Assembly: GCF_006345805.1 (NCBI RefSeq)
Contig: NC_043002.1
Coordinates: 44,268,001-44,332,000, forward strand
DNA: 64,000 nt
Direction: 5' to 3'
DNA from: Octopus sinensis
Taxonomy: Eukaryota
Shown here in pieces: positions 12,987 through 61,200 of the stretch. A program made the position numbers and the translations under genes. The notes under the pieces were generated by a model, which searched no databases, was not told the DNA's origin, and saw nothing but the letters and a program-made list of their open reading frames with translations. The first letter of the stretch is position 1. Each line of letters starts with the position of its first letter.

Positions 12987-13173
12987 GTCAATTACTTTGA
13001 CAGAGATATAGAAAACGCACCGACCTACTTCCAGTCATTCTTTGGTCAAATGTCTTCTGCGATGATTATTGGTTTAAAGCCAAATGGTTACTATTGGATG
13101 ACAGTGCAAGTGTTCAATACAGCAGGACTTAGCGATCTGAGCGAGAAGTATTTGGGTAAAACAGGAAGTGATC
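12987..13173 (+). CDS. CNTN: Contactin-like gene, internal exon (C-terminal half of penultimate FN3 domain)
   Basis: Acceptor ttataaattgcag|GTC, donor GATC|gtaagt; 187 nt, phase 0 to 1. Encodes VNYFDRDIENAPTYFQSFFGQMSSAMIIGLKPNGYYWMTVQVFNTAGLSDLSEKYLGKTGSD, with the FN3 pattern GLKP..Y...VQVFN.AG. The upstream exon was not found and probably lies before the window. Confidence 0.9.
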
Positions 13174-21015: not shown

Positions 21016-21109
21016 TGCAATTCTTGTCTGTATTAGAGCATTTTTAAGGCAATCCTTAAACATTAGTTTAGGCTTATACATATATATGCATGTATAATGC
21101 AAAAATATA

Positions 21110-22407
21110 AACATATTGAAGATATACTTAAAGTCTTGGGAACAGGTTCGAACTCTGATGTCATATATCTTGACTTCAGTAAAGCATTCGACAGGGTTGA
21201 CCATAATATCTTACTCTCAAAATTGGCAGATTTTGGAATCCGTGGAAAACTTCTACACTGGATTAAGTATTTCCTGGCGAATAGAGGGCAACATGTTGTG
21301 GTAGATGGAGTCCACTCAAGCCCAGAAAAAATCACCAGTGGTGTCCCCCAGGGGACTGTCTTGGGCCCGCTCCTCTTTATAATTTACATAAATGACCTTT
21401 CCAGCGTCATAAATCACTGCAATGTGAAAATATTTACTGATGACACTAAGCTCCAGAAAATCATCAATGAAGAAGATCGAACTCAACTCCACTCTGATCT
21501 ATATGCTGTGAGTCAATGGGCAGACAAAAACAAAATGCAACTGAACGAGGGAAAATTTGAGCTGATGCATTTTGGAAGAAGGTCTATACTAAAACAGCCA
21601 TACTCTCTTCCTTCTGGGGAACCGCTTACGGCATCTAATAATATCCGAGACCTGGGTGTAATTGTTGATAAAAATCTCAGTTGAAGTGCCCACATCAACA
21701 ATAAGGTCGATATAGCTCGTAGGATGAGCCCCTGGATCTTTAGAACATTCCGATCGAGAACAAGGTGTCATCATTCCACTTTTCTCCTCCTTTGTACGGC
21801 CACACCTTGAATACTGCTGCCCCTTGTGGACTCCCCGAACAAAACAAAACATCTCATATATTGAATCATGTTACAGGGCACTCACTAAACGAATTGAAGG
21901 CATGACTGATCTCGATTACTGGGACCGCCTTAAAGCTTTGAAACTCTACTCTCTCCAGCGCCGCCGCGAGCGGTACATCATTTGTACGATATGGAGAATA
22001 TACCGCCAGCATTGCCCAAACGACCTGAACATTAGTTTCAAGGTTCATTCAAGGCTGGGACCACGGGCCATACATCCCCTGCCCAATTCAGGTTCACAAC
22101 ATATAGGTACACAGCGACATAATTTCTTTTCTACAACAGGCCCTGCCCTGTTTAACATTGTCCCAAAATTGATTAAAGAGGAAAAGGATCTCATCACCTT
22201 TAAACGGAGCCTGGCCAGATTTCTTCAAGGAATACCGGATAAGCCACCTTTACCTGAATACAACTCCCTCAACAACAACTCACTACTTGAATGCACCATA
22301 AACAAAACTTGACTAAAAAGGATTTAGATAATCCTATCAGGTGGTCCTATTAAGTTAGATATGGCCTGAACCAATCTTTGGTCGAAACATATCTAAGTTT
22401 TTATCAA

Positions 22408-23728: not shown

Positions 23729-24384
23729 CTATATATCGCCTGTGTTTACATGACTATGGGATGCTCTTGCACATTGCTAGTGACAATTGGTTTTCAGTTC
23801 TTTCTTGCTTGCGCCATACTTTTTCATCCTGTCTAAATTTCTTTAACAAAATCATAATCCTGTTATCGTTGTGGCCTCCCAAATTTTGTTGCTTAGACTT
23901 AGAAGATAGTGTACATAGGGTAGCGAGTTTTGTTTTAGAAATTTTACTACCAGTGGCCTAGCATAACTAAAAAGTCAATAGACAACATATTCTCAATATA
24001 AAATAGTGTACATTTAAACACAAGAGAAACTGCCTGTTGAAGGCAAACCGACATTGTTTGTGTGTAAATCGGCAAGAAGAATTAATAAATACTTTGGTCA
24101 TAAAAAAAGCTTAATAGAAGGTTAATACTCTTACACTTAAATATTTCGTTCTTTTAAACTTTCAGTAGAATTTGGAAGTGTCGTGAAGCAAGTAAAAATA
24201 TTAAATCATCTTCCTTATTTTACATTACTATCAATATCTTTTTGTCGATGGTTTACTAGATATAGCACGAATTTTGCTAGATAAATGTGTATGAAAGCTG
24301 TCGAACCTCCCCACCGTTTATCCTTCTCTTATAGTATATACTATAAAGCAATAAGAGAGAAAGTCTCATTTTCCTCTCAGTTAT

Positions 24385-24623
24385 GATATACATACACACA
24401 CACACACACATATATATTTATATATATATATATTTATGTGTGTGTGTGTGTGTGTGTGTATACATGTATATCTTTACATATATATATACACATATATATA
24501 CATATATATATACATATATATATACATATATATACATATATACATATATATACATATATACAAACATATATATATATGTATATATACATATATACATATG
24601 CATATATATATACATATATACAT

Positions 24624-24659
<36 letters not shown>

Positions 24660-24687
24660 AATATACATATATATATATAAAATATAC

Positions 24688-24751
<64 letters not shown>

Positions 24752-24914
24752 TATATACATATATATACACATAGATATATATGCATTTATATATATATTA
24801 TATATATATATATATATACATATATATATACTATATATATATACACACATATATATATATACACATATATATATATATATATATAATATACATATATTAT
24901 ATATAAAAATATAC

Positions 24915-24959
<45 letters not shown>

Positions 24960-25208
24960 TATATATTATATTATATATATATATATATATACACATAGAT
25001 ATATATGCATTTATATATATATATATATATATAATATATATATATACATATATATATACATATATATATATACACACATATATATATATACATATATATA
25101 TTATATACATATATATATATACACATATATACATACATATATGTATATATATATATATGTGTGTGTGTGTTTGTGTGTGTGTATGTATATATATGTATGT
25201 ATACATAT

Positions 25209-25244
<36 letters not shown>

Positions 25245-25262
25245 TATATTATATTATATTAT
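24385..25262. repeat. About 880-bp compound (TA)n/(CA)n array
   Basis: Direct inspection. Similar arrays at about 29860-30115, 33060-33250, 50860-51040, 53500-54080, 57960-58275 and 62143-62557. Confidence 0.95.
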
Positions 25263-25823
25263 ATTTCTTGAGAAAGCAAGATACCAGGACTGAGAGAAGA
25301 AAGAAGATACTCGAAACCCTCTCTTACCACCTGGCTTAAGAAAGAGTGGCCCCATACAGTACAAAATTGTGTATGACCTATTATCGCCGATGACTATAGG
25401 CATGACATAAAAAGAGCGAACGAAAAAAACGTTCAAGCGAATTAATGTTGGAGAAATTAAGATTATACAATTATTTGGCAGTATAGTATATAAAAAACTT
25501 CTCTGATATTAAACGTACGAAATAATATATTCTTTTAATCATTGGAGAAGTATTATCGCATTAATTTTTCAGAAATATAATCCGTTTTACGTATTATATT
25601 TCTGAAATCTCATTGCAATGTCTAGAAGTTTGGCTTTCGTTGCGAATATAATTTACACTGAATGCATACAGGTAATTTATTCAATAAGTTTCAGAGTAAA
25701 ACATACAACCAGATAGAAATACGATATTGTAACTTACTTCAAAGTAATGACAACTTATGTAACTTAACAAAGTTGAATTGAATAACTAGCTAGTAAAATA
25801 CAGCTTCGATGTTACTTTAACAG

Positions 25824-25939
25824 CTCCTTTGAAATACCCGATCGAAATACACGTATATTCTCACGGTCCGGAAAGTGTTCGAGTTACATTCCGTGGAGTT
25901 GGCTACAACAACAACGAAGATCCAATCCAAGGGTACAAG
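25824..25939 (+). CDS. CNTN: Contactin-like gene, internal exon (N-terminal half of last FN3 domain)
   Basis: Acceptor gttactttaacag|CT, donor TACAAG|gtaaga; 116 nt, phase 1 to 0, in frame with the previous exon. Encodes (P)PLKYPIEIHVYSHGPESVRVTFRGVGYNNNEDPIQGYK, the invertebrate contactin SVRV.FRGV...E.PI.GYK pattern. Too short for the ORF track. Confidence 0.92.
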
Positions 25940-35706: not shown

Positions 35707-35881
35707 CTATGCTCCTGGCAGGTCACCGACATGATGGATTATAGTAAATGCGTTCAAGTAGGTGTTGTTAGCTCAGGAATTATCCCTAATCTGAAAAAGA
35801 ACGTTTTATATAAACTTCGAGTATGTGGTTTCACTGGAGCTGGAGATGGAAAATTAAGTGAATTAACTTACTTCACACTTG
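35707..35881 (+). CDS. CNTN: Contactin-like gene, internal exon (C-terminal half of last FN3 domain)
   Basis: Acceptor ttccatttccag|CTA, donor CTTG|gtaagt; 175 nt, phase 0 to 1. Encodes LCSWQVTDMMDYSKCVQVGVVSSGIIPNLKKNVLYKLRVCGFTGAGDGKLSELTYFTL, with FN3 motif L..N..Y.LRV......GDG..S. Confidence 0.92.
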
Positions 35882-36604: not shown

Positions 36605-37649
36605 ACTTATAATTAAGGGCTAAAGAAGGTTATTCTATATTGTTAGTATATATATATATTATATATATATATATATATACCATAACTCTCTGTGAAGTAC
36701 ATTAAGTGTGGCTAACCCTTAAGGGTGGATGCTACTGTAGCTCGTAGCCCCAGGAGGACACCTACTCCAGCTGGCTATCGATACACTTTCTGTGCCTTAT
36801 CATTATTTGCAAAGGGAAGCCATCCTTCCCATCTCCAACCTGACATAATACAGACGGACCCTAGTTTCTGGGTATCATTATAGATATATCGTAAAAAAAT
36901 AGGTAAATAGATAAAAATGACTAGTAAGTAAATGTCTTAAATTAAGTGTGATTGCATATATTATTAAACTATTCCTTCATTCACAAGAACTATGGGTTAA
37001 AATCCAGTAAGAAGTGCTTTACTGATATATAAATAAGTATTCATTATTGCAGACTTAAATTTATTAAATATTTACGAATGTAGCTGGGAGATATTATACC
37101 GACGTTATATCTTCGATTTTTAATCTCCACGATACGTGAATTGAAATAAGTTGGGAAGAATTCACAGTAAGAATTCAGGAATTTAATTCCACATGAAAGC
37201 AATGCAATTTCCCTTTTGTTTTAGAGAGAAATCGATTTCCAGTAGATTTAGAATTGTGAGTAACATTAAGCAACTTTCAAGGATAAACAACTGAGAACGT
37301 TGCCTTATTCATAAATGAGTCACTATTTACTCATAAAGAGTCGTTCTTAACTCTTTTTTTTAAAGAGTGTATTTCCTTATTGACGTAGATATAAAGTTTT
37401 TTTAAATAGCACTTCTCGAGGTAGAAGTGATAAATACATAATAAAGAATATTATCTTTTCTCTTCTACCTATGTGAGCTATACACCATCTTGAGACGTTT
37501 CTTCGGATAAACTACCATTTTAAAAGAAATTATGCAATTTTGTGTTGTCCAGAAACTTCTAACAATCATAGTTTTGAAAATAACCGTGAACGTCCGCGGA
37601 TAGAGCTACTCTTTATTGATTAAGGAAGGGTAACTGGACGTCAATCATA

Positions 37650-38187
37650 ACACTGTTCTGTCCCCAAAACCCTAAGAGCCTCTTCTCCTTATCTCCTCAA
37701 AGACATACAGCATCTCGAAAGAGTCCAGAAGCTGGCTACCCGCATGGTTCATGGTCTCAAAAATTTGTCCTACGAAGAAAGGCTGAGGACGCTCGACCAT
37801 TATTCTCTTGAAAAACGCCGCCGCCGTGGTGATCTCATTCTCGCCCATAACATCATAAGCGGAAAGTGTAACCTCTCGAAAGAGCTGTTCTTCACTCTTG
37901 CTCCAGAGCGTCGGCTGCGGGGTCATTCCAAAAAGCTCTACCTGCGACGATTTCATCTCAATCGAAGGAGAGGAGCTTTCTCCGTCCGGGTTGCGGATCC
38001 GTGGAACAAGCTGCCAGACGAGATGGTGAAGATGCCGACGACCGCTTTGTTCAAAGCCTCCCTTGACCTCAAGTGGCCTGAACTCTTTACATGAACACCA
38101 CCCTGTACTTAACTCCATGTCCCCCTACATGGCCTTGCTATTTGCTTTTGAGCCAAATTAACTAACTAACTAACTAACTAACTAAGA
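37650..38187 (+). mobile_element. CR1 LINE 3' fragment with (CTAA)n tail
   Basis: LSYEERLRTLDHYSLEKRRRRGDLI...LRGHSKKL...FSVRVADPWNKLP; tail ctaactaactaactaactaa. Confidence 0.92.
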
Positions 38188-38753
38188 ATCTATATTTTCT
38201 ATGAATTCTATGTTAATTATCAAATACAGTACAAAAATGCTCTTCTTCTGTTCTGATTTATTGTGTACATGTCTAATAATGGATTCAAATTTTGACCCGA
38301 GGCCAGTAATTCTGGGAGAGAGGTGAGTCGCATACAACGCCCCCCCCTCCCAGTTTTCCACTGCTTGAAATGTCATTGAACCCGAAGGGCTGAAAGGCAA
38401 AAATCGACATCCGCGGAATGTGAACTTAGAACGAAATGCCGCGAAACATATTGTCTGGCATGCAAGTGATTCCTCTACCGCATTTGCCTTGTTTACATAT
38501 CCAATAATAATGATAATAATTTCTATCCCAAAATTTAAGAAAATTCATATTGGTTTGCATTTCATCTTTGTTACCAAATCAAATATAGTATCCATGGAAA
38601 TAGCCAAAAAATGGATTTGTTCTGTGTACATCTCTAATAATAGTGATCATAATTTTGTTTCTTATCAATGTACGATAATGTGAAAATTATCTCCAGTTGA
38701 ATAATTTGACAAAATCAAAATTTTACAAATATTTCCTTTCAAATATTTTCCAG

Positions 38754-38884
38754 GTGGTCTGGTGAAATATAATCCGCAAGATTTTGAAGTCTTGGCGATT
38801 TCAAGCACGATTCATGCAAACTTTGGAATAATTTTAATTCTATATATTATAACTATCTACTCACCGAACAACATTTTTACATGA
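38754..38884 (+). CDS. CNTN: Contactin-like gene, terminal exon A (GPI-anchor-signal-like C-terminus)
   Basis: Acceptor tttcaaatattttccag|GT, phase 1. Encodes (G)GLVKYNPQDFEVLAISSTIHANFGIILILYIITIYSPNNIFT-stop: small-residue cluster, spacer, hydrophobic tail, no cytoplasmic domain. AATAAA at 38966-38971. Confidence 0.85.
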
Positions 38885-39994
38885 AAATTCAAAATTCAAA
38901 ATTTTGCTTTTATTTGAATATATTTTAAAAGCTTCAACATTCAACGCGTTTGATTGAAAATGCTAAATAAAAAATATATATATATAAATAAAATTTTAGT
39001 TTTAGTTATTTTCATATATTTTCTGTATTCTACATATAATCAAAATATCTATTATGCATCAATTTTCAAAATTACAAACAACATAATAATGAATTTTTAA
39101 AATTTATTTGAATTTTCCCCTAAGTGTAACATTTTCTTTAGTCTTAATTCATACCTGAATAAAAAGTTCTTTAGAAATAAATCTGATAAATGATAATTAT
39201 GATAATATTGTTGTTGTTTTTATCGTCCCAAGATCTGCTTTGAGCTTATAGGCGTATAAGGAAACAGCTTTTAAGCTATGACCAATCCGCTTATTTGTAT
39301 AATAGAAAGTACATTGATCCTTGTATCCTTTTTATTGAAACTGGGTTATATTCGTTATATTCTTATGAATATATGCGGCGCCACTAAACTCATGTGATCT
39401 AATCCGTCATTGGTGTAACTGCACCACCATCAACATTACTCGGGAAGTTTCAAAGGTTTCATTCTACTGCCCGCAATTGGGCCAGGCCTCGATATAGATA
39501 CAATGATTCCGGCTGTTTACCATAATTAGAGGATAGAGAGGAAAGTGGTATTCCGGTGGAGACCTGCCAACGGAAATGGCAGTGGCCCAGGGCTGTGATT
39601 AAGGCCTTTGTTATCTGCCTTATTTGCTGGCCGGCCCACTCTCCACAACCTACGTCGAGGTCAGCTACTTAGAGGAAACCGAAATTGTGCTTAGTACAAT
39701 ATCATGAGTCAGAATACCTACAGTATCAATCCGTAATCTAACAAGTCCTGTGAGGTAAAAAAAAATGTCTCTTAGTTTGTGGAGGGAAACTGAAAGCTAC
39801 TGGCTGAGCCAATGGAACAAACAACAAAATGATGCTGAGTGGTAAGAGGTTTTCGTTTCCACATGAAAACATTGTTTAATTTTGAAATGCACGAACGTCA
39901 TATCTAGAGAAAAATCTTTATTTGAATTTAAATGTTTTTAGCGAAAAATTAATCAACAATTAATCAACAATTAATCAACATTATTAACAATATA

Positions 39995-40375
39995 TATATA
40001 TATATAAACGGCAGTTTGTCTGTGTGTGTTTCTGTGTGTCTGTTTGGTTGCACCCTCACCCTGACCACGGCTTTCAACCGATTCTGATGAAACTTGACAC
40101 ACACATAGCCCAATGTCATAATTCAAAACTAACGCAGCGAAAATTTTGAAAAGTTCCCCCAGTTCTAAAAAAAATCGATAAATTCGACATGGGGTCGAGA
40201 ATCAGAAACACAAACCACAGTATGTCTAGGGGACGCAACTGGACCTTTTTTAACTCAAAAAAAAAATTACCATAATTTGTTTCCATTTTTTTGCTATTTT
40301 TGGCTATAACTCTCTAAAAATGCTTTATAGTTATTTCACTTACAAACCTGAGCAACGCCGGGCGATACTGCTAGT
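39995..40375 (-). mobile_element. Helitron/Helentron-like non-autonomous element, variant
   Basis: Minus-strand start ACTAGCAGTATCGCCCGGCGTTGCTCAGG as at 9065; the distal part differs. Confidence 0.55.
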
Positions 40376-40396
40376 ATATATATATATATATATATA

Positions 40397-40574
40397 TGCG
40401 CAGGTGTAGCTGTGTGGTAAGTAGCTTGCTTACCAACCACATGGTTCCGGGTTCATTCCGCTGTATGGCACCTTGGGCAACTGTCTTCTACTATAGCCTC
40501 GGGCCAACCAAAGCCTTGTGAGTGGATTTGGTAGACGGAAACTGAAAGAAGCCCGTCATATATATATACATATA

Positions 40575-40606
<32 letters not shown>

Positions 40607-40815
40607 AATATTTGTGTGTCTTTGTTGCCCAACATTACTTGACAACCGATGCTGGTGTGTTTACGTCGAGGTAACTTAGCGGTTCGGTAAAAGAGACCGA
40701 TAGAATAAGTACTAGGCTTCCAAAGAATAAGTACTGGAGTCGATTTGCTCGACTGAATGCGTTGCTCCAGCATGGCCGCAGTCAAATGGCTGAAACAAGT
40801 AAAAGAGAGAAAAGA

Positions 40816-40816
<1 letters not shown>
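40397..40816 (+). mobile_element. tRNA-derived SINE, full length
   Basis: gcgcaggtgtagctgtgtggtaagtagcttgc...ccgggttca head; tail tggctgaaacaagtaaaagag. Confidence 0.9.
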
Positions 40817-40892
<76 letters not shown>

Positions 40893-43800
40893 TGTGTGTG
40901 TGTTTGTGTAGTAATGCTCAAAGGAAAATCAATATAGCAATAAAATTTTATATAGTAATTCAGTGTATTTCTTTGATTAAGAAATTAGAAATTGCTATCT
41001 ATAGTTAAATTGAAACTTAATTAAAGTCTCTTAATGAGGATCAAATATCCAGATTATTATTATAAATCGCATACCTTATACAACACTTTAAAAGCAAAGA
41101 AACTTTGTTCACGATGAAATGATTTCAATGGAAAAAGTAAATTATAATTTCTTTCTAATTTTTGGCAGAAGGTCAGCAATTTTCAGAGAAGGGCAAGTCG
41201 ATTATATCTATCCCGTACTGAACAGTACTTAGCTTATCGACCTCCGTAAGAATGAAAGGAAAAGTTGAACCCAGCGAAATTTGAATTCGAAAAGAACAAC
41301 CACAAAGGATGCTGGCTGCTTAGCCTCCGTCCAACGTGTTAATGATTCTGCCAGTGCGCTGGCAGAATCATTTAAACAGTAATCTAAATGAAATATATTT
41401 CGGTCATCTGAACAAACATCCAAAGTTTTCATCTCTCGAAATCAATATTTGTAGCTGGATGTACATTTCTTAGTAATATGTAGTTCAGACAAACCATTTG
41501 AAGGGAAATTTCGATCAAATACATCGTCTTCCCTATGTTATCATTCTTACCACATATCAAGAATTTAAGAACAACATGAAACTTCCCATTAACAAATTTA
41601 CCTTTCCTCCTTCCTTGGTCGCCAAATATCAAGAACTATAATCAATTTAATCGACTAATGCGCTCCCTAAATTTCTAGCTTTGTGACTGTATTAGAAACA
41701 AAACTTAATATTATAAACCAGTTTGGGTTTTCGTCGTCACATTTATAGAGTGATTTGAGGAATATTTGATTGAACTTTCTGGTAGGTTAATCAAATGACC
41801 TGATTTCGGCTTCCACTTTGACACGGATATCAACTGTGTTTTGGTTTGGAATAATTTCACTTTTGTTTCTAATGCATTCCATTTTGTATCTATAGAAAAC
41901 CGTTCCGAAATGACGTTGCACACATGTAAAGACATCACTTCCCTTACCCCGACCTTAATGTCTACTAGATTGTTCGAAAGCTTTAGATATAATAAAAGCG
42001 ATTTCTACGTTGGCGACTCAACATTATTTATCTGAAAATATGTAGACATTTTAAATAATATAATCTCCAAAGACTTCACAAAAATAATAGCTATACAAAT
42101 ATTTTACTTTTTGCTATTTTGCCAGAAAAAAAGTTGAAATTTTTTCAGTTGAATTCGAAGACAAGAGACAACATTATGAGAATAATCGTCTTGTTTGTTA
42201 CCTCCAATTATTAGATACCAAAAATGTTTGGCATCATACTGCCCAACAACATCTCTATGAATTGGCTCGGAAACTCCAACTGAAAAATTGAAATGTATTA
42301 GCACCCCGCTTCAGCAGGGGCTAAAGAGGAGTATCTTTACGTTTGGATGAATTCACTGCAGTATGGTTTCGTTCGACCAATGAAAGAAAAGCATTAGAGT
42401 CATAAGTGAAATGAAATTATTCCAATCTAATGCTGAAACTGTATTTCAATATTTAAGATTCCTTACAAAACACAGAAGAAGCTTTTGTTTCACCATTTAA
42501 CCGACTTACAAAAAACAGCAGCTAAATCTCTCTCATACTATATCCGCTGTCTTAAGATATGAAGGACAAATTACATTATATATTCCTAGACATTCCTAAA
42601 TATGAGGGAGAGTTATCATAGTTCAGCTCAATCAAGGATAACTTTGGCAATCCAACTTGTTCTCTATAATTCCCCTTACTTCACGACTGAATTTGCTAAT
42701 CTTGTTTCTTTGTTAGACATTAGTCGGCTAAATGAACTTGCGTATAATAATTGAATTACTCAAAAAGCGAAAGAGGTTAGCGGTCCGTATCCGTCACTAA
42801 TTTACTTCTTTTACTCTAACATTCACTAACCACAGAGTAAATATAGTTCCAAGTTCTCGAAGAAGGTTATAGCTGATTGTTATCTGTAATATTTCGCTAC
42901 AGTAATGCTTTAAAAAGCAATATATTAATTATGGAATGACATCGAGGACATTATTATACACACAAGAGTAATAGTTTTCGTTAAATTATGAAGCAATAAC
43001 GGAGACACAATCTGTAATAAACATAACATTTATAATAGGATTATAAACGATTAAGTGTGATTCATATGTAATTAAAACGTTATATGACCAACAGCTCAGT
43101 AGAGCCGCTAATGTACTTCGTTCACCAACAGCAGTGGCGCTGCTGCAGCTCTGGGTCAAAGCTTAGTCACATAATCTTTCTGATATAAAATAAGTATATA
43201 GTAGAGCGTATTAAAATTTATTAAACCTTTACCAGCGTAGCTGAGTAATATTATATCAGTATTATATCTTCGAATTCCAATCTACACGATACGTGAAGTC
43301 AATGCAGTTAATAATAATTCGCAGTTTAATCCAGGATTTTAATTTCAGACATCATAGTCTGCAGAGACGATTGCAATTATCCTTTTGTTTTACAGAGAGT
43401 AGATTTAGAATAATATTAAGCAATCTTCAAGGATAAACAACTGAGAAATTTGCCTTATTCATAAGCAAGCCCAAATTTCCTCATAAACAGTCATCGTTCG
43501 AAACTCTTTCTAAAGGGTGTTCAGTTATGACGTAAATATAAAACCGATACATAACATTTCTCGTGGTAGAAGCGAAAAGTATATAACAAAGAGGAGTTGA
43601 ACGGCAAAAGTTGACATCAACAGACTGTGAACTCAGAACGTAAAGACAAACGAAATGCCGCTGAGCACCTTTCCCAGCGTGCAAGCGACTCATCTACCGC
43701 ATTTATCTTGTTTACATATCCAATAATAATGATAATTATTTTCATCCCCAAATTTAAGAGAATGTATATTGATTTGCATTTCGTCACTGTTACCAAACCA

Positions 43801-43993
43801 AATAATGTATCTATGAAAATCGAAAAAAAAAAAGAAAATGGATTTGTTCTGCTGTTAATTCGTGTTAACATATCTAATGATAGTGATCATAATTTGATTC
43901 CTTATCAATATATGCTAATGTGAAAACAATCATCAGTGGAATAATTTAACAAAATCAAAATTTTACAAATCGTTTCTTTCAAATATTTTCCAG

Positions 43994-44124
43994 GTGGTCA
44001 GGTTAAATATAATCCGCACGATTTTGAAGTTTTGGCGATTTCAAATTTGATTCAAGCAAATTATAGAATAATTTTAATCTTAAATGTCATAACAGTCTAC
44101 TCCCTGAACAATTTATTTACTTGA
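43994..44124 (+). CDS. Duplicated terminal exon B (putative alternative last exon)
   Basis: Identical 17-nt acceptor tttcaaatattttccag|GT, same phase and length (131 nt). Encodes (G)GQVKYNPHDFEVLAISNLIQANYRIILILNVITVYSLNNLFT-stop. 25 substitutions versus exon A, no indels. AATAAA at 44142 and 44216. Confidence 0.7.
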
Positions 44125-44464
44125 AAAGTCAAAATGAAGAAAATAAATATAAGGAATGAAATACTTTTTAGAAATTTCAATATGCAACATACTTTATCGA
44201 AAATGCTAACTTCAAAATAAAGTATATATTTTTTTACAGTTGATTTCATATATTTATTATATTCTACTTAAAATCAAAATGTTTACTATGCGACAAATTT
44301 CAAAATTATGAAGAACAACAAAATTTTAGAAATAATTCGTATTTTCCCCTACATGTATCTTTGTCCTCTATTATTCTTAACGGTTACTGAAAATTGAATG
44401 AAAATTTCTATAGAAATAAAAGACATCTAATAAGTAACAATAATGGCATTTTTTCTGCTGTGAT

Positions 44465-44860
44465 GGCGGCGAGCTGGCAGAAACGTTAGCGCGCCGGGCG
44501 AAATGCGTAGCCGTATTTCGTCTGCCGTTACGTTGTGAGTTCAAATTCCGCCGAGGTCGACTTTGCCTTTCATCTTTTCGGGGTCGATAAATTAAGTACC
44601 ATTTACGCACTGGGGTTGATGTAATCGACTTAATACCTATGTCTGTCCTTGTTTGTTCCCTCTATGTTTAGCCCCTGTGGGTAATAAAGAAATAGGTATT
44701 CCGTCGGTCTTTACGTTCTGAGTTCAAATTCCGCCGAGGTCAACTTTGCTTTTCATCTTTTTGGAGTCGGTAAATTAAGTACCAGTTGCGTACGGAGAGA
44801 GATCTAATCGACTGGTCCCCACCCTCAAAATTTTGAGCCTTGTGCCTAGAGTAGAAAAGA
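44465..44860 (+). mobile_element. Dimer-like SINE (third family)
   Basis: ggcggcgagctggcagaaacgttagcgcgccgggcgaaatg head, with the internally repeated module gagttcaaattccgccgaggtc(g/a)actttgc. Partial copies at about 17020-17210, 27245-27325 and 41180-41350. Confidence 0.85.
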
Positions 44861-46109
44861 TATTTCCTATTGTGTTTTCGTCGTTGTCCCAAGTCAGCTT
44901 TGAGTGAGTAGATTTTGAGAACATATACATTTTAGACTTGACCAATCCGTTTATTGTACAGTAGAAGCTACATTGATTAGTGTACTCTTTGTATTGAAAC
45001 TTAGAAGGTCGAATGACCTCATTGTATTGTTATGAATATAGGCGGCGCCACTAAGCACGTGTGACTTAATCCATCAGCTGGTGTAACTCCACCACCATTA
45101 GCACCAAAATTACTTGGTAAGTTTCAAAGGATTTACACCACTACCCGCAATTGGGCCAGGCTTCTATATAGATACAATGATTCTTGCAGTGCACCATCCT
45201 TTTCATACTACCAGTATTAGATGTTAAAGGTGAAAATGGTATTCCGGTGGTAACCGGCCATCATAAATATCAGTGACCCAGGGCTGTGAATAACACCTTA
45301 GGTATCTGCCTTATTTACTAGCAGGCCGACTCGCAACAACCTGCGTCCAAGTAAGCTACTAAGACAAAACTAAAATTGTGGCTAGTCGCACATCATGACA
45401 CAAAAATGCTGCTGGTGAGTCGGGTACGATACACGGTTTTCATCTCCATATGAAAACATACAGGTCGTTTTGGAAATATCTGAACGTCATATCCAGAATA
45501 ACAGCCTTTAGTTTAAAACGTTTTATGGCGAATTAGAAAGTAATCAACCTTATTAACAGAGTTTAAATATGTTTTACTGGTAATGTCTAAATGAAATAAA
45601 AATAACAGTAAAAATGACATTGATTAATTATAATGATTAATGACTGTAATTTTAGTAATTTAGAGAAATACTAAAAATTAAATAATGAAAATCACGACGA
45701 GTATGTCGTCATCAGAAAACAATCGTAATCAGCAATAATGCCAGGTTATATTTTAATAATTCATATATGAATAAATTTACCTCTAGACATTTGGTAACAT
45801 TCTGATAGTTTCAAAGTTTCTAATCACTTTTAAAGATAAATTGCACAATTTCTTTAGCTTGGTATGAAGAGGCAATTTATTTAATTATAACATAAAAAAA
45901 AACTACGTTTCAAAATGCTGGAAGAACAAAGAATTTATATTAAATAATGTTTACACATATTTGAATGGTACAGTATACACATGTGTATATGTGTGGTGGA
46001 GGGAAAATATGTATATATTATGTATTATAATTAAAGCATATACAAATGCTCACATAAACACACACACACACAAACATACACATATATATATATGTATATA
46101 TTGAGCATT

Positions 46110-51015: not shown

Positions 51016-53535
51016 ATATATAGGTGTGTGTGTGTGTGTGGTGTTAGGAAGACGCACTAATTCAAAAGATTTGATAATATTGACCGAAAAGGAGTTATGG
51101 TTTTAGGAAAGCAAATCATAGAAAATGCGAGGTAATTTTAATCAAATGAAAATGTATAAGAACTATAGAACGCAAGTTTATAAGCTATGGCCAAATTTCT
51201 GAAGGCATCTATTAATTCCAGTGGAAAGTTAAAACACTAAATAATAGTAAGGATAAGACATGCTGATTCTAAATACATGCAATGTTTTTAAGAATTTATC
51301 GATGCAGAGAATTAATTTTTTGCAGTAAAATATCTTTGGTAAAGAGAATTTCAATGGCTTCACTTGTCTAAAGGCCATAAATTCACCTATTGTGAAAGAA
51401 TTTACCTTTCTAAGAACTTTACTTGATAGTATGTATCTATATTCAACTTTTTGTCTTTCTTCATCATATTTCATCCAATTCTGGTTTTCCCTTCCATTTC
51501 TCCTTTTCTTTAACTTTCTCTCGCCTATTTCTTTTCACCTTGTATCTTCGCGTTCTTTATATTTTACACAATCTTTGTACATCTCTTATATTTTGTGTAT
51601 TCTTATTAAGTATATCTTTTGAACCAGTAGAATACAACTATGTTATTTCAGAGGTCAGAGGGATGCGAGAGATTTCTTCCTAACTTCCGAAATAATTCAG
51701 TCGAGTATGAACTGGCTTGTAATTTATTTAGATTAATGTTTAATAAAAGTTTGGAATATAGTATTTGAAAGATAAATATGGAGTAGTGGATGAGAGAGGT
51801 TTATTCGTGTTTGCTATGTATAAATTTATTCATTTTCTGTGCCTCTCGTTGAGAGTGTTCCTTACGGCTAGTAACTGGATAAAAGGATAAACCAATGTTA
51901 AGTGAAGTTGTCAAATTCACTTTTTCATCTATCAATTAATATACTTTATATAATTATTTCGTTACTTCTTCCTTGTTTATATATCATTAACCCAAACTTC
52001 TCTGTACGAAAGATTTCCTAGAATCCTTAAGTTACATCTTTTATGGTTCAGAAAACGTCTAATACAAACCATGCTCGTTATGACTCAACTTCTTTAACTA
52101 TTCCAAGATACATTCCCCTCCTCTTTGTTTTGTTTGATCATCCAACACTTATTTGATAGGTCACTTTTTATATCTGTTTTATATATCACGATTTTAAAAT
52201 GGTTATTTTTTTAATCACTTTGTCTCTTTGTTTGCATGCTTCCTCCGTACTTTATACTTCCAAATTTACTGTCTTCATTGCTGTCTACCAATGTTTTAAA
52301 ATCAATCTTAACCGGTACTTGTAAGCAGTTTCCCTATGAAACAAATATCCGAACGTTATCCTATTTATTGATTAATACTTATTGATTTTGTTTAACTTCA
52401 TGTTACCAGTATTCTCCTATAAGAATTTCCCTCCTTTCACAACTGATTCATTTATTATCTCCAAGAATATAATGCTAAAGCAAGATTTCGATGTTTCCAA
52501 TAAAACATTGCGATTCCATAAAAATTTTAAGATTCAAATGTTTTCTGCAGGAAACGTAAAATTTTATGAAAAGAATTCGATTACATATATATTATTGGTG
52601 TTGATCCGGCGTAACTCATAACACCGACCATTGACATTACTAGACACTTTCGAGGAAAATCTACACTGTGCAATAAACAATATCAAATTCAATTATGTAA
52701 ACATATACGTTCCTTCTGGAAAGAACCAGAAGATAACACATACCAAATTAGAAAATTGAATAAGCAATTCGTTAAATCAAACAAACTAGAGAATATCAAC
52801 TAGATGACTCCATTTATTACTAATTCAGCTTTAGCTCGATCGCAAATAACTACAGCAAAACAAAATGCAATTCTCTTAAAGACACCGACATCAGAGCGTT
52901 TAAAATCACTTCTGTTCTACACAAAGAAAAAAATTAATCTTTCTCACCATATCTGTTTCTCCGTACTTCACTTTCGAAGACCAGACCAATACCAAACTTT
53001 TACCTTAAACATTTTAGACTCTCCAATCTAACTAAAACTGTTAAAGGTGTTGTAAACAAGTACAGTGTGTTTTCTCACAGTGTCAAATGTGTACGTAAGA
53101 AGGAGAATACAACAAATTGTTTCCAATTTGATAACGGAGAGCAAAATAATATGCATCAGCTACCAAAACTGTTCCAGTAAGAAATATCGAATTCACTAGA
53201 TCTATAAGCTATAAAACAAATATGATCTTATATACCTGACAAACTTTTGTTCAATATCTCCATGTGAATCCATATCATGTGAATGAATAATTATTCTAAA
53301 ACTTTTGGTAATATCGATGTTGAAGCAAACGACGGAATTAGCAATCAGCAGCCCCATTGGTTTGTGTGCCTTTGCCTTACATAATTGGAAAACAATCTTG
53401 CCAGAGGTTAAAATGATCATTACAGAGCAGAGGAATCGATTACCTTAAATAAGTGTCGCCCAACAGAAACCACGGACCTTTCCAGGAAAATAAATCGACA
53501 TTATATATATATATATATATAATATATTAATATAT

Positions 53536-53572
<37 letters not shown>

Positions 53573-53658
53573 CTATATGGTGTATGTATATATATGTTAT
53601 GTATATATATGTATGTATATATGTATGTATATATATGTGTGATATATATATATATACC

Positions 53659-53852
<194 letters not shown>

Positions 53853-56689
53853 TTATAAATATATATAGTATATATATATACTAATACATACATATATATA
53901 TGCACATATATATATAGTGTATATATATACATATATATATAGAGATATACATACATTATACATATATTTATACATATATATATGTATGTATATATATATA
54001 TATATATATTAATATATATATATATATATATATAATTACATATATATGTATAGATATATACATACATATAAATATAATATAGGTGTATAAATGTTGAATG
54101 TGGATTCGTCCTTTAATTGGATGTTTCCAAAAAAGATTTCTAATGTTGATTCTTCATACTTTGCTGGGAGTTTACGGGTGTAAATTTGCAAAGATACGAA
54201 AGTAGTACTTGTGTATAATTTATGATGAATTTATGGTATAAAGTTCCATAAATCCCATCAATTTTGTTAAGAATGGAGGAAACAAGTTGTTAAAATGTGT
54301 AAGAAGTTTAAATCTTGCGGACAATCGTTTCATACAGAGATATAATAAATTCCTGATTGAATAAAATAAAATAAATATCAACGTACTCTTCGGTACAGGA
54401 AGGAAAGAAATCAAAATACAAGGAACTTGAAAAGGAATAGAGTATAAAAAGTTGGGTGTGGAAGTGTCACATTGGGAGTCATGTCAGATATTGAACCATA
54501 ACTGCCGGCTTCAACGATTATTTGAAGATATAAGCAAAAAGGTATCGGAGACATTCCAGCTATAGATGAGTATCGAAATTAGAATTATTACTCCATATAC
54601 GTAGCGTATGGCAAGTAAGTAGTAGAAATGTCCAATGGCAAGACAATACCAAATTTAAATTAAAATTAAAACTAACCGTTGAAATCAGTACATAGTACAA
54701 TATACTTTTTAAAAATCTATACAAAAGAATGAAGTTTAGCGCGAGGAAGTGGTATATGAGAAGTTAATACTAGATAGTTAACGCAAACAAATGGCAAAAA
54801 ATAGAGGAATGAGAATGAGTTACCGAGAGATGATATTAGGTAATAAAGGAGAAAAAATAAGTAAAAACGGAGAAGCAATTACCAATATTACAATTAAATT
54901 AGTGTGTACTTATGGTGTTTGTAAAGATAAAAATAAAATGAAAAGGTGAATTTAAAAAAATGAAGTTAGCTAGACCAAAGTAAATGTAGGGGAGATAAAT
55001 GAGCGGAGAAAGAGATGAGTAGAAAAATAAAAAATTTCGATAGGGATGTGTGGGTTATGCAGAAGGTGTATTTTAATATATATAAAAATAGATTATTTCA
55101 GAGATTATAATCCAGCTTAGTATTATGTGAGAGATGTATAGAATGGCAGTATGTTCGTAATGGTATTCGCTCTGTAGGGGTGCCATGCCAGTATAAATAC
55201 AAGAAAAAACTACGAGTATAAGGGTGGTGAATGTGTAAAATTTGAATGAAATCGGTTGGGTAGTTCTCGAGTTTTAGTGATGCACACATACAGACACACA
55301 GACAGAGCGACAGACACATATTCTCAGTTTTATATATAGAGAGAGAAATAACGTAGGATTAAAAATGTAAATAACTTAGGATTAATTCCTCAACTTTTAT
55401 ACTTGTCTTACCATAAATCAGAAGGATGGTTAAATTTCGTTCGTAATCTTCCATCCACACGAGGAAAATCCAAAATGACTAAATAAAAACATATATCACA
55501 GGCAGTGCTAAATTTCTGCGAACGAGAAAATCTTCATAGATTTCTTTCAATATTGACAGTCTCATGGAAAAGTCTCATAAGATGAAGACACACCTAGATT
55601 GCACGTCACACCGTTCACCATTATTATTATTATTATATCATCAAACTCACATGTTCTTTGCTCCCCCAATTAGATTAGAACCTGGCCTCCTAAAGTATAA
55701 ATAATGTTAATATAAATGCATACGGAAACCCAAGTGACTCCGTTAGCATAACACTTTCTCCAAGGCTCCAAATATATAATTAAAGCCATAGTCCACCAAT
55801 ATTTATAATTCCAATCCTGGAATTAGGTATAAACGCTTTAAACTTCAGTATATTTTGTATACACACTCACCAATGGACAGAAATACAAGAAATCAAACGT
55901 CATTAACCAGCTAGAAGTAAGATTTGAAAAATAAATCTGAACAGTATAGCCAGATCTTATATATCGGTAAAGAGAAAAGTGTGATTTGTGAGTTACACAG
56001 AGCTAGAACATCCTATTCCCCTATGAGCAAACATTGAACCAACTTTTTAAAAGCCGCATAATTTCAGCATCTAGAAACTTTTTCAGCCAACCAATTTCCA
56101 CCATCATTAACTTGATTTATTCTAATTCCCTATTCTACGTTCTACTCCAATTGCAATTTCGTCCCAAGTCACTCAACACTATATATTTCTGTTCATCTTC
56201 CTATTAACTTTCCGACAATCTTATTAAAATAAAACAAATCAACACCTCTTTGTAAGAAATTTTTGTTTCTGGCTGAGCATGGAATAGCATCTAATACATT
56301 GGTTCATGATCATGACGTCATGAGTTCAATTCCAGGAAGGAGGAGAGTTGTATCTCTGAGAAAAAAAAAACTTCACGCCACGTTGATCCTATCTATTCAA
56401 CTGTTGGTGCAGCTCTCTCTTCCTGCAGTTGTCACATTCTAAATGTTCCGGTACGACAAGCTTCAGAGAGTGTCTAAGTCTGTACGCAATTACATCAGCA
56501 CCAAACACAATTTGCGAACACATGGTAGATATTGTCAAGTCACTCGTTTGTATATGACGACTGCTTTATTTATTATTAAAAAAAAATTAACTAACAAAAT
56601 ATCGTCAGGTCAACATTCTGCACTGTGAGCACATTATTAACTTTTGCGAGTTGTACTGTTGCCGCCAGGAAAATTTTAATATATGCGTG

Positions 56690-58275: not shown

Positions 58276-61200
58276 CTGATGGAGCTCGGCCGACAGATCG
58301 CAACCAACTAAAAACATAGCGGCGACCCTGAAAATCCATGGCTTTATGAGGACGTTGGCGCAAGTAGAGAGGAAGAAAAGAGAAGTCGAAAGGGCTACAC
58401 TCTCATTGCACCACACATGGCTTTGGTTAAGCCAAGTCCTCAAGGTGGACAAAGACAAAGAGAGAGGATGGAAACAGGAAACACCAACCACAGAGTGTCA
58501 AAAAATGACACGCCCACTGCCACAGTCGAAGAAGGCAAGCAGGGCAAACAACAGATAGGCGGCGATGGGGAAACGGAAAATAACCACCCGGATGAAAATA
58601 CCTATGCAGAAAGAACCAGTGGACAACCGTCCAACGGAGGAAGAAAAAAAAGAGAGGAACTGGGGACAAGAAAACCCAGATAACATGCAAATTCTTCCGG
58701 AATGGAACCTGCTGGCATGGAGAAAACAGGGGAAGGATGCAGGTTCGCTCATCCCAGGCTCTATGGAAATTGCAATCAAACCCACTCGACCAAAATTCCT
58801 TAACCAAAACCAAGACCGAAACCAAAACAGAACAAATACAAGATGCCCCAGAAATATGCAGACATAGTGCGGAATGCCCCCACAAGGAGAAGGCGCACAT
58901 TTGCAGAGGAAATGCAGACGGCGGCAGCAGACAAGAAATTTTGTGGAAATAGCAGAGAAATTGTGGGACAACTGGCCTGGATACATCGTCTTCAGAGCCA
59001 GGGGCTCTCACAACAGCACTCAAAAACCACCACAATCAAGGGACCCAGTGGCCACCGCTGACACCAGCCCAGGTGCCACACCGACAGCCTTATTGACACC
59101 CCAAATATCTCACCAGTGCTTCTGCTGAATGTCAGAGGTCTGGTGAAACCACTAATATGAGTAAAATTCCTTACCTTAGGGACTTAAGCACAAGCAACCA
59201 TGCAATATGCATAGCGCTGACTGAAACGCACCTGTCAAGCAGTATAGCAGATGCAGAAATACACGTACCCAAAGTATACTGTTTTTCGGTCAGACAGGAA
59301 GGAAAGAACTCATGGGGGGTTGCCCTGTACGTCCGTGAAGATGTCACACCCATAGTACTGTTGACACCTCAAACTCAGTCTGTGACACACTGATAGTACA
59401 CATGAAACAACCGAAATAGTAATATGTGTCACATATCGGCCACCAGACACCCCTAGTCATGAAGGAGTGTTTGAAGATAGCCTCAGAAGAATAGAAGAAG
59501 TCCTGGACAAACTGGACCAGGGTAACACCATTCTACTGCTGGGAGATTTTAACCTTCCGAAAGTCAAATGGCCAGATGGCCATCTCCTCCCTGGAATGAC
59601 ATCACTTGAACAGAGACAGACAGAGTCCTTGTTGGCTCTCACACGCAAGTTTTTCATGGAACAAGCAGTGCTTCGGCCAACAAGAGGTGAGAATGTCTTG
59701 GACCTCTGTTTCACAAGCAACCCGATGCTCATCCACAACATAATGGTAACACCAACAATTCTCTCAGATCACAACTTAGTAGAGGTAATGATATATAGTG
59801 TGAGAGAGTTAGTTGAGACGCAGCCATTAGAAAATACCACAGGCCTATCCAGTCTAAACTTCCATAAGGCAAACTGGAAGAAGATCAACGAAGAGATCCG
59901 AAAACATGACTGGAGTCACTTCATCACCACACAAGACACCAACACACATTTCCAACATTTCATGACAACAATACAGAACATATGCCATAAGTTTGTCCCG
60001 GAGAAAAAAAGCCAGCGGGCATAGGAACGTTATTCCCAGAGACAGGAAAATACTTATGAGGCGAAGAGCTAAGCTCTCGAAGCAACTGAATGCACGGCAG
60101 AGAAACAATGAGGGATTTCACCTGAAACTTTTTGAAACGGAAACTGCACTCAAACTTTCTTATGAGAAGGAGAGGGCAGAGAGAGAAGCCAGGGCCATAG
60201 AGAATATTAAAACAAACCCTAAAGCTTTCTTTAAATTTGCGAAAGAAACCACCTCGGTACACTGCAAGATTGGCCCACTCTTTGATAAAAAGGGCTCTCT
60301 AACTGAGGACCCCCAAGGGATAAGTGAAATACTAAAGGAACAGTATAAAAGTGTGTTCACATCCCCTCTGGGGCACATGCAAATCACAAACCCAGAAGTT
60401 TTCTTTGATGCCACACACATATCCAAACCAAACAACAACCATCGACCACATAGACATAACAGAGAGGGATGTATATTGCCCATAGAAGAAATGAGAATAA
60501 ACTCAGCTGCTGGACCAGATGGATTCCCAGCAGTCCTCCTAAAACCATGCAGGCATGCCCTAGCGGGACCACTGAAGTGGCTCTTCAGTGGTTCCTTGGC
60601 TAACGGTAAAACTGCCCAGGGCGCTAAAAGAAGGCACCATATGCCCTATCCACAAAGGAGGGGAGTAGAGCAGAGGCCAAAAACTACAGGCCAGTCTCCC
60701 TGACGTCACACATAAGTAAGTCATGGAACGAATCATCAGAAAAAAACTGATCACGTTCCTCGAAGAAACTAACCGTCTCACTGACACACAGCATGGCTTT
60801 CGCCTAGGAAGAAGCTGCCTTACGCAGCTGTTACAACACTACGACTGGTACTGAAACAACTAACTACTGGATCGCTCACAGGTGGATGTGGTATATCTCG
60901 ACTTTGCGAAGGCCTTTGACAAAGTCGACCACGGAGTGATATGTCACAAAATTACTCAGACTCGGCATAACAGGAAAAGTAGGTGAGTGGATACATGACT
61001 TCCTGAAGGACAGAAGCCAAATGGTTGCAGCCAATGGAGCCCTCTCGGGAAAGACACCAATGGCAAGCGGGGTGCCACAGGGCACAGTCTTGGGACCCTT
61101 GCTGTTTTTGGTGGCGTTCTCTGACATGCCCTTGGTAGCACAAACAACATCCCTCACTAGCTATGCTGATGACACAAAGGTAGCACAGGCAATCAAAAAC

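What the first reader, a model, noticed from the sequence alone, without database searches (positions are those of the whole stretch)
38754..44124. Tandemly duplicated, still-intact last exon: candidate switch between two C-terminal anchoring signals of a contactin-like protein
Seen: two 131-nt phase-1 exons 5240 bp apart behind an identical acceptor (tttcaaatattttccag), each ending in TGA at the same position with AATAAA downstream. They differ at 25 nt (9 purely synonymous codons, 12 amino-acid changes) with no indel or stop, while the flanking duplicated DNA has many indels and private TE insertions. I found no copy of the preceding FN3 exon between them, so both must splice from the donor at 35881. 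Established: contactins are GPI-anchored through a C-terminal signal. Inference: these are alternative last exons. A has a good omega-like cluster (ISST) and a clean hydrophobic tail. B reads ISNL and puts R and N into the tail, so it may anchor differently or be secreted, while GG.VKYNP.DFEVLAIS is kept in both.
Basis: partly seen in the sequence, partly recalled or inferred. Interest (0 to 1): 0.82.

Follow-up and report, generated by a model that had tools for sequence, protein, structure and literature searches.

The report
Duplicated last exon of octopus contactin
The octopus contactin gene carries a second, still-intact copy of its last exon 5.2 kb after the one in use, but it encodes the same kind of membrane-anchor signal and nothing found here shows that it is ever spliced in.

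Summary
There are two 131-nt phase-1 exons (38754-38884 and 43994-44124) behind an identical 17-nt acceptor. They differ at 25 nt with no indel, and both end in TGA. The gene is Octopus sinensis contactin-like XP_029638021.1. Its annotated C-terminus is exon A, as it is in O. vulgaris and O. bimaculoides. No B-type tail exists in any protein set I could search, but short transcript-derived fragments of A are missing there too, so RNA evidence is lacking rather than negative.

Argonauta hians has only one copy of this exon, so the duplication arose in the Octopus lineage, before O. sinensis and O. bimaculoides split. With Argonauta as outgroup, B has changed no faster than A (7 against 9 nt). 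B's "odd" Asn in the hydrophobic tail is ancestral. Charged residues next to the tail also occur in the working O. bimaculoides exon. B keeps the conserved Ala-x-Ser site and a hydrophobic stretch within the range of working homologues.

The "switch between two anchoring signals" reading is therefore not supported. Both exons look like GPI signals, and the processed proteins would differ at two residues. An intact B is compatible with neutral drift (P about 0.1-0.2). My estimates: B silent or nearly silent about 0.55, a genuine alternative last exon about 0.35.

The parts
12987..13173 (+). Contactin exon n-3 (second half of an FN3 domain; VNYFDRD...GKTGSD; ends in phase 1)
   Evidence: Read from the sequence. 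100% match to XP_029638021.1 residues 1049-1110.
25824..25939 (+). Contactin exon n-2 (first half of the last FN3; PLKYPIEIHVY...QGYK)
   Evidence: Pfam fn3 hit on the joined last domain.
35707..35881 (+). Contactin exon n-1 (second half of the last FN3; LCSWQ...SELTYFTL + G), followed by the donor gtaagt at 35882. This is the only donor available to both last exons.
   Evidence: The junction ...FTLG|G... matches the annotated proteins.
38737..38753 (+). Acceptor of exon A (tttcaaatattttccag)
   Evidence: It resembles the Argonauta acceptor ttcttttcaattatttttag.
38754..38884 (+). Last exon A, the copy in use. Encodes (G)GLVKYNPQDFEVLAISSTIHANFGIILILYIITIYSPNNIFT*
   Evidence: Identical to the C-termini of O. 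sinensis XP_029638021.1 and O. vulgaris CAI9724527.1.
38966..38971 (+). AATAAA 82 nt after the stop of A. Argonauta has one 77 nt after its stop.
37019..39957 (+). Duplicated segment, A-copy. It carries a private insertion at 37448-38390.
   Evidence: blastn.
39958..43176 (.). Spacer between the two copies with no counterpart after B. At least 39990-40900 is a high-copy interspersed repeat.
   Evidence: no homology to the region after B. (dozens of copies at 93-97% identity; 6976 first-look candidates).
43177..45548 (+). Duplicated segment, B-copy. It carries a private repeat insertion at 44421-44929.
43977..43993 (+). Acceptor of exon B, identical to that of A. The 20 nt before the exon differ only at -19 (C/T).
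43994..44124 (+). Last exon B, the intact second copy. Encodes (G)GQVKYNPHDFEVLAISNLIQANYRIILILNVITVYSLNNLFT*. Its use is unproven.
   Evidence: No protein with this tail.
44216..44221 (+). AATAAA 92 nt after the stop of B. A second one lies at 44142-44147.

Best explanation
A segment of about 2-3 kb holding the terminal exon of the octopus contactin gene was duplicated in tandem. This exon encodes the linker plus the GPI-attachment signal. The duplication happened in the Octopus lineage, after the split from Argonauta and before O. sinensis and O. bimaculoides separated. Copy A, next to the last FN3 exon, is the working terminal exon: it is spliced to the 35881 donor and followed by AATAAA at +82, as in Argonauta. 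Copy B lies 5.2 kb beyond A's poly(A) signal. It still has everything a terminal exon needs: an identical acceptor, an open frame, a stop codon and AATAAA at +92. It also encodes the same kind of signal, with a conserved Ala-x-Ser site, a short polar spacer and a hydrophobic stretch of about 13 residues. Most likely B is silent or used only at noise level. Splicing and cleavage at A would commit the transcript before B can compete. B would then be intact because too little time has passed for drift to break a 131-nt exon whose sequence is only loosely constrained, possibly helped by an early short gene-conversion tract over the acceptor and the first 50 nt. If B is used at all, the product is again a GPI-anchored contactin. 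Its mature part would differ from the A form at two residues (Leu/Gln and Gln/His), because the rest of the exon is cut off on anchoring. Shown here: the duplication, its phylogenetic placement, A's use in annotation, and the sequence competence of B. Inferred: the silence of B, the GPI anchoring of either form, and the kinetic argument.
For: Annotation in three species ends in an A-type tail, and each gene has a single model: O. sinensis XP_029638021.1, O. vulgaris CAI9724527.1 and O. bimaculoides XP_052824420.1. The same pipeline did give isoforms to the paralogue, contactin-2 isoform X1. No B-type tail appears in 1.84e9 representative proteins; the only hit is the A tail at 71% identity. 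None appears in clusters of 35-110, 112-355 or 641-2040 aa. The exon as a whole diverges like its flanks, 19% against 17-29%. Simulating a neutral B gives P(frame and stop kept) = 0.46, P(no indel) about 0.40 and P(hydrophobic stretch at least as good) = 0.39. It predicts about 9 amino-acid changes against the 10 sites seen where B differs from both A-type exons. Even between the two working A exons the tail is loosely constrained: 4 of 43 residues differ between O. sinensis and O. bimaculoides, against 1 of 160 in the FN3 part before it. No docking/selector complementarity of the kind that drives mutually exclusive terminal exons in Drosophila was found. For 'same kind of signal': Asn31 and Val35 of B are ancestral, and Ala-Ile-Ser and the hydrophobic score are kept.
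Against: With Argonauta as outgroup, B has not changed faster than the working copy: 7 against 9 nt, with about 6 replacements each. A dead exon should run ahead of a constrained one. On the B lineage codons 1-17, the mature part, show at most one substitution in 50 nt; the one candidate is an unpolarised synonymous site in codon 9. Neutral expectation is 4-5.5 (Poisson P 0.004-0.014 for none, 0.03-0.07 for at most one), while the rest of the exon changed at a neutral-like rate (Fisher P 0.002-0.02, computed with zero changes in the first 50 nt). The 100-nt stretch spanning the acceptor and the exon's 5' half is the least diverged of the whole duplicated unit (9 against a median of 28). This pattern also fits selection on B's splice site and mature peptide. 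Absence from protein databases is weak evidence, because short transcript-derived fragments of the A form are missing there too.
Confidence: 0.55

Rival explanations
1. B is a genuine alternative last exon kept by selection. In some cells or stages, A's acceptor or poly(A) site is skipped and the 35881 donor joins B. The product is still GPI-anchored, with an almost identical mature end. It is made from an mRNA with a different GPI signal peptide and a different 3' UTR, so what is switched is regulation or anchoring efficiency, not the mode of anchoring.
For: B has an identical acceptor and near-identical polypyrimidine and branch region. Its frame and stop are intact. It has AATAAA at about the ancestral distance, +92 against +82 in A and +77 in Argonauta. 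Codons 1-17 show at most one substitution on the B lineage, where 4-5.5 are expected. B is no faster than A overall. A-versus-B omega is 0.26, and B-lineage omega is about 0.5. The conservation minimum of the duplicated unit sits on the acceptor and the exon's 5' half. B is older than the O. sinensis / O. bimaculoides split yet still intact. Tandemly duplicated, mutually exclusive terminal exons are known, for example Drosophila pip and PGRP-LC (PMC9013439).
Against: There is no annotated isoform in three species, and no B-type tail in any protein collection searched. All the rate tests rest on a handful of sites, and the partition of the exon is partly post hoc. One-sided constraint on A plus an early gene-conversion tract explains the same pattern. 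B sits beyond a poly(A) site that was sufficient in the single-copy ancestor. No competing RNA structures were found.
Confidence: 0.35
2. One reading: A and B are alternative last exons that give different fates. A would be GPI-anchored, and B would be secreted or anchored in another way because its omega cluster and hydrophobic tail are damaged.
For: B loses the Ser-Ser-Thr cluster (it reads Ser-Asn-Leu) and gains Arg25 at the edge of the hydrophobic stretch. Its hydrophobic score is slightly lower than that of A, 2.42 against 2.59.
Against: Asn31 is ancestral and present in Argonauta's only, working exon. The working O. bimaculoides A exon has Lys23 and Glu25 in the same place and an even lower hydrophobic score, 2.35. 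B keeps Ala-Ile-Ser, which aligns with Ala-x-(Ser/Gly/Ala) in nearly all mollusc contactins. Neither tail has a stretch long enough for a membrane span plus a cytoplasmic tail. Use of B is itself unproven.
Confidence: 0.07
3. The two copies are an assembly artefact (uncollapsed haplotypes or a mis-join), or B belongs to a separate downstream gene.
For: None found. This genome alone could be examined for the second copy.
Against: The copies differ at 17-29% of aligned sites and by private repeat insertions, far beyond allelic divergence. B keeps ancestral states that A has lost, so it is an old paralogue. Nothing upstream of B resembles a further contactin exon, and the sequence after B is LINE and repeat material.
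Confidence: 0.03

Closest known systems
Invertebrate contactin (Drosophila Contactin type: C-type lectin domain, six Ig, four FN3, GPI anchor)
   Same: The domain order is the same: Lectin_C at residues 49-159, six Ig stretches, then FN3 domains. NCBI names the protein contactin-like. The C-terminus has the FTLGG linker, an Ala-x-Ser site and a hydrophobic end shared with Pecten, Mytilus and Nucella contactins.
   Different: No contactin I know of has a duplicated terminal exon (my own knowledge; the literature searches found nothing). GPI anchoring of the octopus protein is inferred from sequence only.
Tandemly duplicated, mutually exclusive terminal exons (Drosophila pip and PGRP-LC 3' variable regions; PMC9013439)
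   Same: Homologous terminal exons in tandem, each with its own acceptor, stop and poly(A) signal, served by one upstream donor.
   Different: In those genes each exon's use is documented and, for PGRP-LC, driven by competing RNA structures. Here use of the second exon is undocumented, and no docking/selector pairing was found.
Alternative 3' exons that set the mode of membrane attachment (NCAM-120 GPI against NCAM-140/180 transmembrane; Aplysia apCAM GPI-linked and transmembrane isoforms; acetylcholinesterase H and T exons)
   Same: A choice of 3' exon decides the C-terminal anchoring signal of an Ig-superfamily adhesion molecule. NCAM and apCAM isoforms are described in PMC2290859 and PMC2132711; the rest is from my own knowledge.
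   Different: Those exon pairs are unrelated in sequence and give clearly different anchors. Here the two exons are paralogues, and both encode a GPI-type signal.
Unannotated intact tandem exon duplicates (Letunic 2002 as cited in PMC9013439; Ivanov and Pervouchine 2022)
   Same: An intact, splice-competent copy of a neighbouring exon lies in non-coding DNA and is absent from annotation.
   Different: In human data only some such copies show tissue-specific RNA support. No RNA data could be consulted here.

Membership tests
Contactin (invertebrate type) | N-terminal C-type lectin domain followed by six Ig domains | tested here: met
   Pfam on XP_029638021.1: Lectin_C at 49-159 (E 1.3e-5, above the cut-off) and Ig_3 with 6 stretches (E 2.7e-64).
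Contactin (invertebrate type) | Four FN3 domains after the Ig domains | tested here: inconclusive
   Pfam fn3 E 2.2e-30, but only 2 stretches pass on their own. The window-encoded last domain matches fn3 at E 4.9e-6. The remaining domains are inferred from collinearity with mollusc contactins.
Contactin (invertebrate type) | Secretory signal peptide and C-terminal GPI-attachment signal | not testable with these tools
   By eye, the N-terminus MWSLITMIDLIILSCSFLSLVNG looks like a signal peptide, and the tail has small residues, a spacer and a hydrophobic end. No SignalP or GPI predictor was available.
GPI-attachment signal (exon B specifically) | Small residues at omega and omega+2, a polar spacer of about 5-10 residues, a hydrophobic stretch near the C-terminus, and no cytoplasmic tail | tested here: inconclusive
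   By a rule of thumb only, B has Ala-Ile-Ser 11 residues before IILILNVITVYSL (mean Kyte-Doolittle 2.42), with 5 residues after it. Ten working homologues range from 2.08 to 3.09. No trained predictor was run.
Alternative last exons / mutually exclusive duplicated terminal exons | Two terminal exons, each with acceptor, stop and poly(A) signal, downstream of one donor | tested here: met
Alternative last exons / mutually exclusive duplicated terminal exons | Transcripts that use each exon | not testable with these tools
   A is supported by three annotations. B appears in no protein collection. No read-level RNA data could be reached, and A-type fragments from run assemblies are absent too.
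Alternative last exons / mutually exclusive duplicated terminal exons | Both copies kept intact in related species | not testable with these tools
   Argonauta predates the duplication and has a single copy. From shared derived residues, B must have existed in the common ancestor with O. bimaculoides.
Alternative last exons / mutually exclusive duplicated terminal exons | Competing RNA structures (a docking site pairing with a selector before each exon). This is typical of the Drosophila cases and is not required for alternative last exons in general. | tested here: not met
   Duplex energies are no better than shuffled controls (-52 against -52.6 +/- 4.2). No complementary 12-16-mers are shared by both upstream regions.
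Decaying pseudo-exon | Frame broken by stops or indels | tested here: not met
   However, intactness has P about 0.18 under neutrality.
Decaying pseudo-exon | Faster evolution than the working copy, with dN/dS near 1 | tested here: inconclusive
   Changes on the B and A lineages are 7 and 9 nt (binomial P 0.8). B has 3.5 synonymous and 6 replacement changes (omega about 0.5), and A has 5.5 and 6 (omega about 0.3). The counts are too small to separate 0.5 from 1.

The most novel reading that the evidence does not exclude
Exon B is a regulated, Octopus-specific alternative last exon of a neural adhesion gene. By skipping A, some cells would make contactin from an mRNA with a different GPI signal peptide and a different 3' UTR. 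This would change how efficiently it is anchored, and so how much is shed, or where and when the mRNA is translated. It would be a young, datable case of a terminal-exon duplication recruited into splicing in a cephalopod nervous system gene.
Probability: 0.35. Interest if true: 0.5.

Novelty: new member of a known kind. Interest (0 to 1): 0.3.

Why it matters
If B is used, it would be a lineage-specific alternative terminal exon in a conserved neural adhesion molecule, with a known birth window (after Argonauta, before the O. sinensis / O. bimaculoides split). That would make a tidy system for asking how a duplicated terminal exon gets past the upstream poly(A) site. It would also let one ask whether GPI signal peptides or 3' UTRs are the target of selection. 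If B is silent, it is an ordinary relic. It then serves mainly as a caution: short, loosely constrained exons such as GPI signals can stay open for a long time without function, so intactness alone is weak evidence. Either way the mature proteins would be nearly identical, which limits the functional stakes.

Tried and rejected
1. A search with a 203-aa spliced C-terminal fragment found nothing because of the tool's length filter. Two padded queries failed on a miscounted region. Padding after the fragment worked.

2. I searched for B-type tails with phmmer against 1.84e9 representatives and with a 63-aa query against short proteins. These returned only the A tail and a genomic read-through ORF of exon n-1 from an unidentified octopus (L004-L007). 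The run accession appears in no paper.

4. I looked up seven ORFs around exon B, and the read-through ORF of exon n-1, by exact sequence, hoping to reach run assemblies of other octopods. None of them is in the collection. That same call did surface the Argonauta model that gave locus L008.

5. A docking/selector RNA-pairing test was negative.

6. I rejected the "all 25 changes are neutral" null. It gives a joint P of 0.012, but it is the wrong null, because part of the divergence accrued on the constrained A lineage. I replaced it with a model in which only B is neutral.

7. I rejected polarising changes with O. bimaculoides alone, because it is inside the duplication. I used Argonauta instead.

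8. Misassembly was rejected on divergence and private insertions.

The genome-wide copy numbers of the private insertions (37448-38390, 44421-44929) and of the spacer 40900-43176 could therefore not be measured. Only within-window copies were checked.

10. Literature searches on octopus contactin and on GPI alternative last exons found nothing specific. The FT-GPI paper gave no rule I could apply offline.


Full report
**What is there**

The window is G000:C6:44268001-44332000 of a 2.72-Gb assembly with 13,516 contigs. From memory, that size and contig count match the published Octopus sinensis assembly.

The plus strand carries the last four exons of a contactin gene: 12987-13173, 25824-25939, 35707-35881, and a 131-nt terminal exon at 38754-38884. 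Spliced together they match O. sinensis XP_029638021.1 (contactin-like, 1250 aa) at 100%, and O. vulgaris CAI9724527.1 at 100% over the shared 845 residues. Pfam finds a C-type lectin domain, six Ig stretches and FN3 domains. From my own knowledge this is the invertebrate contactin layout.

**The observation**

- A second 131-nt exon lies at 43994-44124.
- The same 17-nt acceptor precedes both exons.
- The two exons differ at 25 nt, giving 12 replaced and 9 purely synonymous codons.
- There is no indel, and TGA falls at the same place.

The exon sits inside a duplicated segment, 37019-39957 against 43177-45548. These are the only two copies in the genome. The preceding FN3 exon is not part of the duplicate. 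Each copy has a private insertion, and the 3.2 kb between the copies is at least partly a young high-copy repeat.

**Is intactness evidence of function?**

Not by itself. The exon is 80.9% identical between copies. That is no better than the 324 nt of intron before it (83.3%, only two gap events) and close to the other flanks (71-80%).

A null in which all 25 changes are random gives a joint P of 0.012 for an open frame with 12 or fewer replacements. That null is wrong, because half the divergence accrued on the working copy. I therefore let only B drift, with about 14 substitutions and half the flank indel rate. The results:
- The frame and stop survive with P = 0.46.
- No indel occurs with P about 0.40.
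- The hydrophobic stretch stays at least as good with P = 0.39.

About 9 replacements are then expected, against the 10 sites at which B differs from both A-type exons.

**Relatives**

O. bimaculoides XP_052824420.1 ends in GGQVKYNPHDFEVLAISSTIHAKFEIILILYIITIYSPNNIFT, an A-type tail. A fragmentary Argonauta hians model surfaced in a cluster look-up. It gave a 68.6-kb genomic locus, L008.

L008 holds one copy of the exon, at L008:58545-58669, encoding GGQVRYNQHDFEVLAGSSRIKANFVIIFVFNSIIVSSGNIL*. No second copy lies in the 10 kb downstream or anywhere else in the locus. The duplication is therefore younger than the Argonauta-Octopus split.

The two A exons share His21, Tyr31 and Ile35. B agrees with Argonauta at positions 31 and 35 (Asn, Val), and its Gln21 is one step from Argonauta's Lys. 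The duplication therefore predates the O. sinensis / O. bimaculoides split, and B has stayed open since then.

**Rates with an outgroup**

Over codons 1-39, parsimony puts 9 nt changes on the A lineage and 7 on the B lineage, with 5 unresolved.
- A lineage: about 5.5 synonymous and 6 replacement changes.
- B lineage: about 3.5 synonymous and 6 replacement changes.

B is therefore not decaying faster than the working exon. The working exon is itself loosely constrained: between O. sinensis and O. bimaculoides, 4 of 43 tail residues differ, against 1 of 160 in the FN3 part just before it. With so little constraint on A, these counts cannot separate a neutral B from a selected one.

One pattern does favour selection on B. 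In codons 1-17, the part that stays on the mature protein, the B lineage shows at most one substitution; the only candidate is an unresolved synonymous site in codon 9. Between 4 and 5.5 are expected. The rest of the exon changed at a neutral-like rate, and the A lineage changed four times in those same 50 nt. The 100 nt spanning the acceptor and this 5' half are also the least diverged stretch of the whole duplicated unit.

There are three caveats. The numbers are small, the partition is partly post hoc, and an early short gene-conversion tract would give the same picture.

**Do the two tails differ in kind?**

I find no support for that.
- The Asn that B "puts into the tail" is ancestral and sits in Argonauta's only exon.
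- The Arg at position 25 falls where the working O. bimaculoides exon has Lys23 and Glu25.
- B keeps Ala-Ile-Ser, which aligns with Ala-x-(Ser/Gly/Ala) in almost all mollusc contactins retrieved.
- Its best 13-residue hydrophobic score is 2.42. That lies between O. bimaculoides A (2.35) and O. sinensis A (2.59), and inside the 2.08-3.09 range of ten homologues.

These are rules of thumb, not a trained predictor.

If the Ala-x-Ser region is the attachment site, everything after it is removed. The two mature proteins would then differ only at residues 3 and 9 of the exon (Leu/Gln, Gln/His). A switch would mainly change the signal peptide and the 3' UTR.

**Is B used?**

I could not reach read-level RNA data. 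The indirect evidence is as follows.
- Three annotations give one model each, ending in A, although the same NCBI pipeline gave the paralogue isoforms.
- phmmer with the B tail against 1.84e9 representative proteins returns only the A tail, at 71% identity.
- Word-indexed searches covering 35-110, 112-355 and 641-2040 aa return no B tail.

This is weak negative evidence, because transcript-derived fragments of the A form are also absent from those length classes.

B has AATAAA at +92, close to A's +82 and Argonauta's +77. The hexamer occurs only 0.2 times per 100 nt in the window, but simple retention from the ancestor would explain this. No docking/selector complementarity was found.

By position, A should win. 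The poly(A) site that sufficed in the single-copy ancestor lies 5 kb before B. This last point is inference.

**Verdict**

The duplication is real, dated and specific to the Octopus lineage. A is the working exon. B is a competent-looking spare that encodes the same kind of signal. My probabilities are:
- About 0.55 that B is silent or nearly so.
- About 0.35 that it is a genuine alternative last exon with the same anchoring mode.
- About 0.03 for an artefact.

Duplicated, mutually exclusive terminal exons are already known (PMC9013439). So are 3' exon choices that set GPI against transmembrane anchoring (and my own knowledge). At best this is a new member of a known kind.

Noticed in passing
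window 35707-35722: A second in-frame acceptor (cag ending at 35721) lies 15 nt inside exon n-1. Using it would delete LCSWQ from the last FN3 domain. The annotated proteins use the upstream acceptor.
   Followed up: no
window 39339-39588 and 42214-42288; protein P0002: The older O. bimaculoides RefSeq model XP_014777082.1 leaves exon A after ...STIHA. It continues into sequence homologous to these two window stretches, which lie downstream of A and in the spacer. The newer model XP_052824420.1 ends normally, so the old one is probably a mis-model.
   Followed up: partly
L008:58545-58669; protein P0024: The Argonauta hians model GAB1607303.1 (191 aa) reads the terminal contactin exon in the wrong frame (...KLDTISMTLKFWQVQAELKRIS). 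The correct frame gives a normal GPI-type tail.
   Followed up: yes
window 38459-38588 and about 43680-43810: A second low-divergence block between the two copies lies about 200-300 nt upstream of each exon (13-15 differences per 100 columns against a median of 28). blastn does not detect it in the Argonauta intron. Its meaning is unknown.
   Followed up: partly
window 39990-40400: A repeat of about 400 bp has dozens of copies at 93-97% identity across the genome (6976 first-look candidates). It looks like a young SINE-like element inserted just after the A-copy of the duplicated segment.
   Followed up: partly
window 21067-22312 and 59386-63791: LINE fragments on the plus strand. Pfam finds RVT_1 at 21067-21684 and 60940-61311, and an endonuclease domain at 59386-60024.
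   Followed up: yes
L004-L007 (Logan contigs of SRR11869384, -85, -91, -94): These are genomic contigs from an unidentified octopus carrying exon n-1 with one replacement (Ile to Val). They are about 85% identical to the window over 550 nt including intron. The species could not be identified, and its last-exon region could not be reached.
   Followed up: partly
window 4199-4520, 5917-6534, 24347-25339, 53445-54112: Long AT-rich microsatellite tracts give spurious open frames (IYLSIYLS..., YIYIYI...) on both strands.
   Followed up: no
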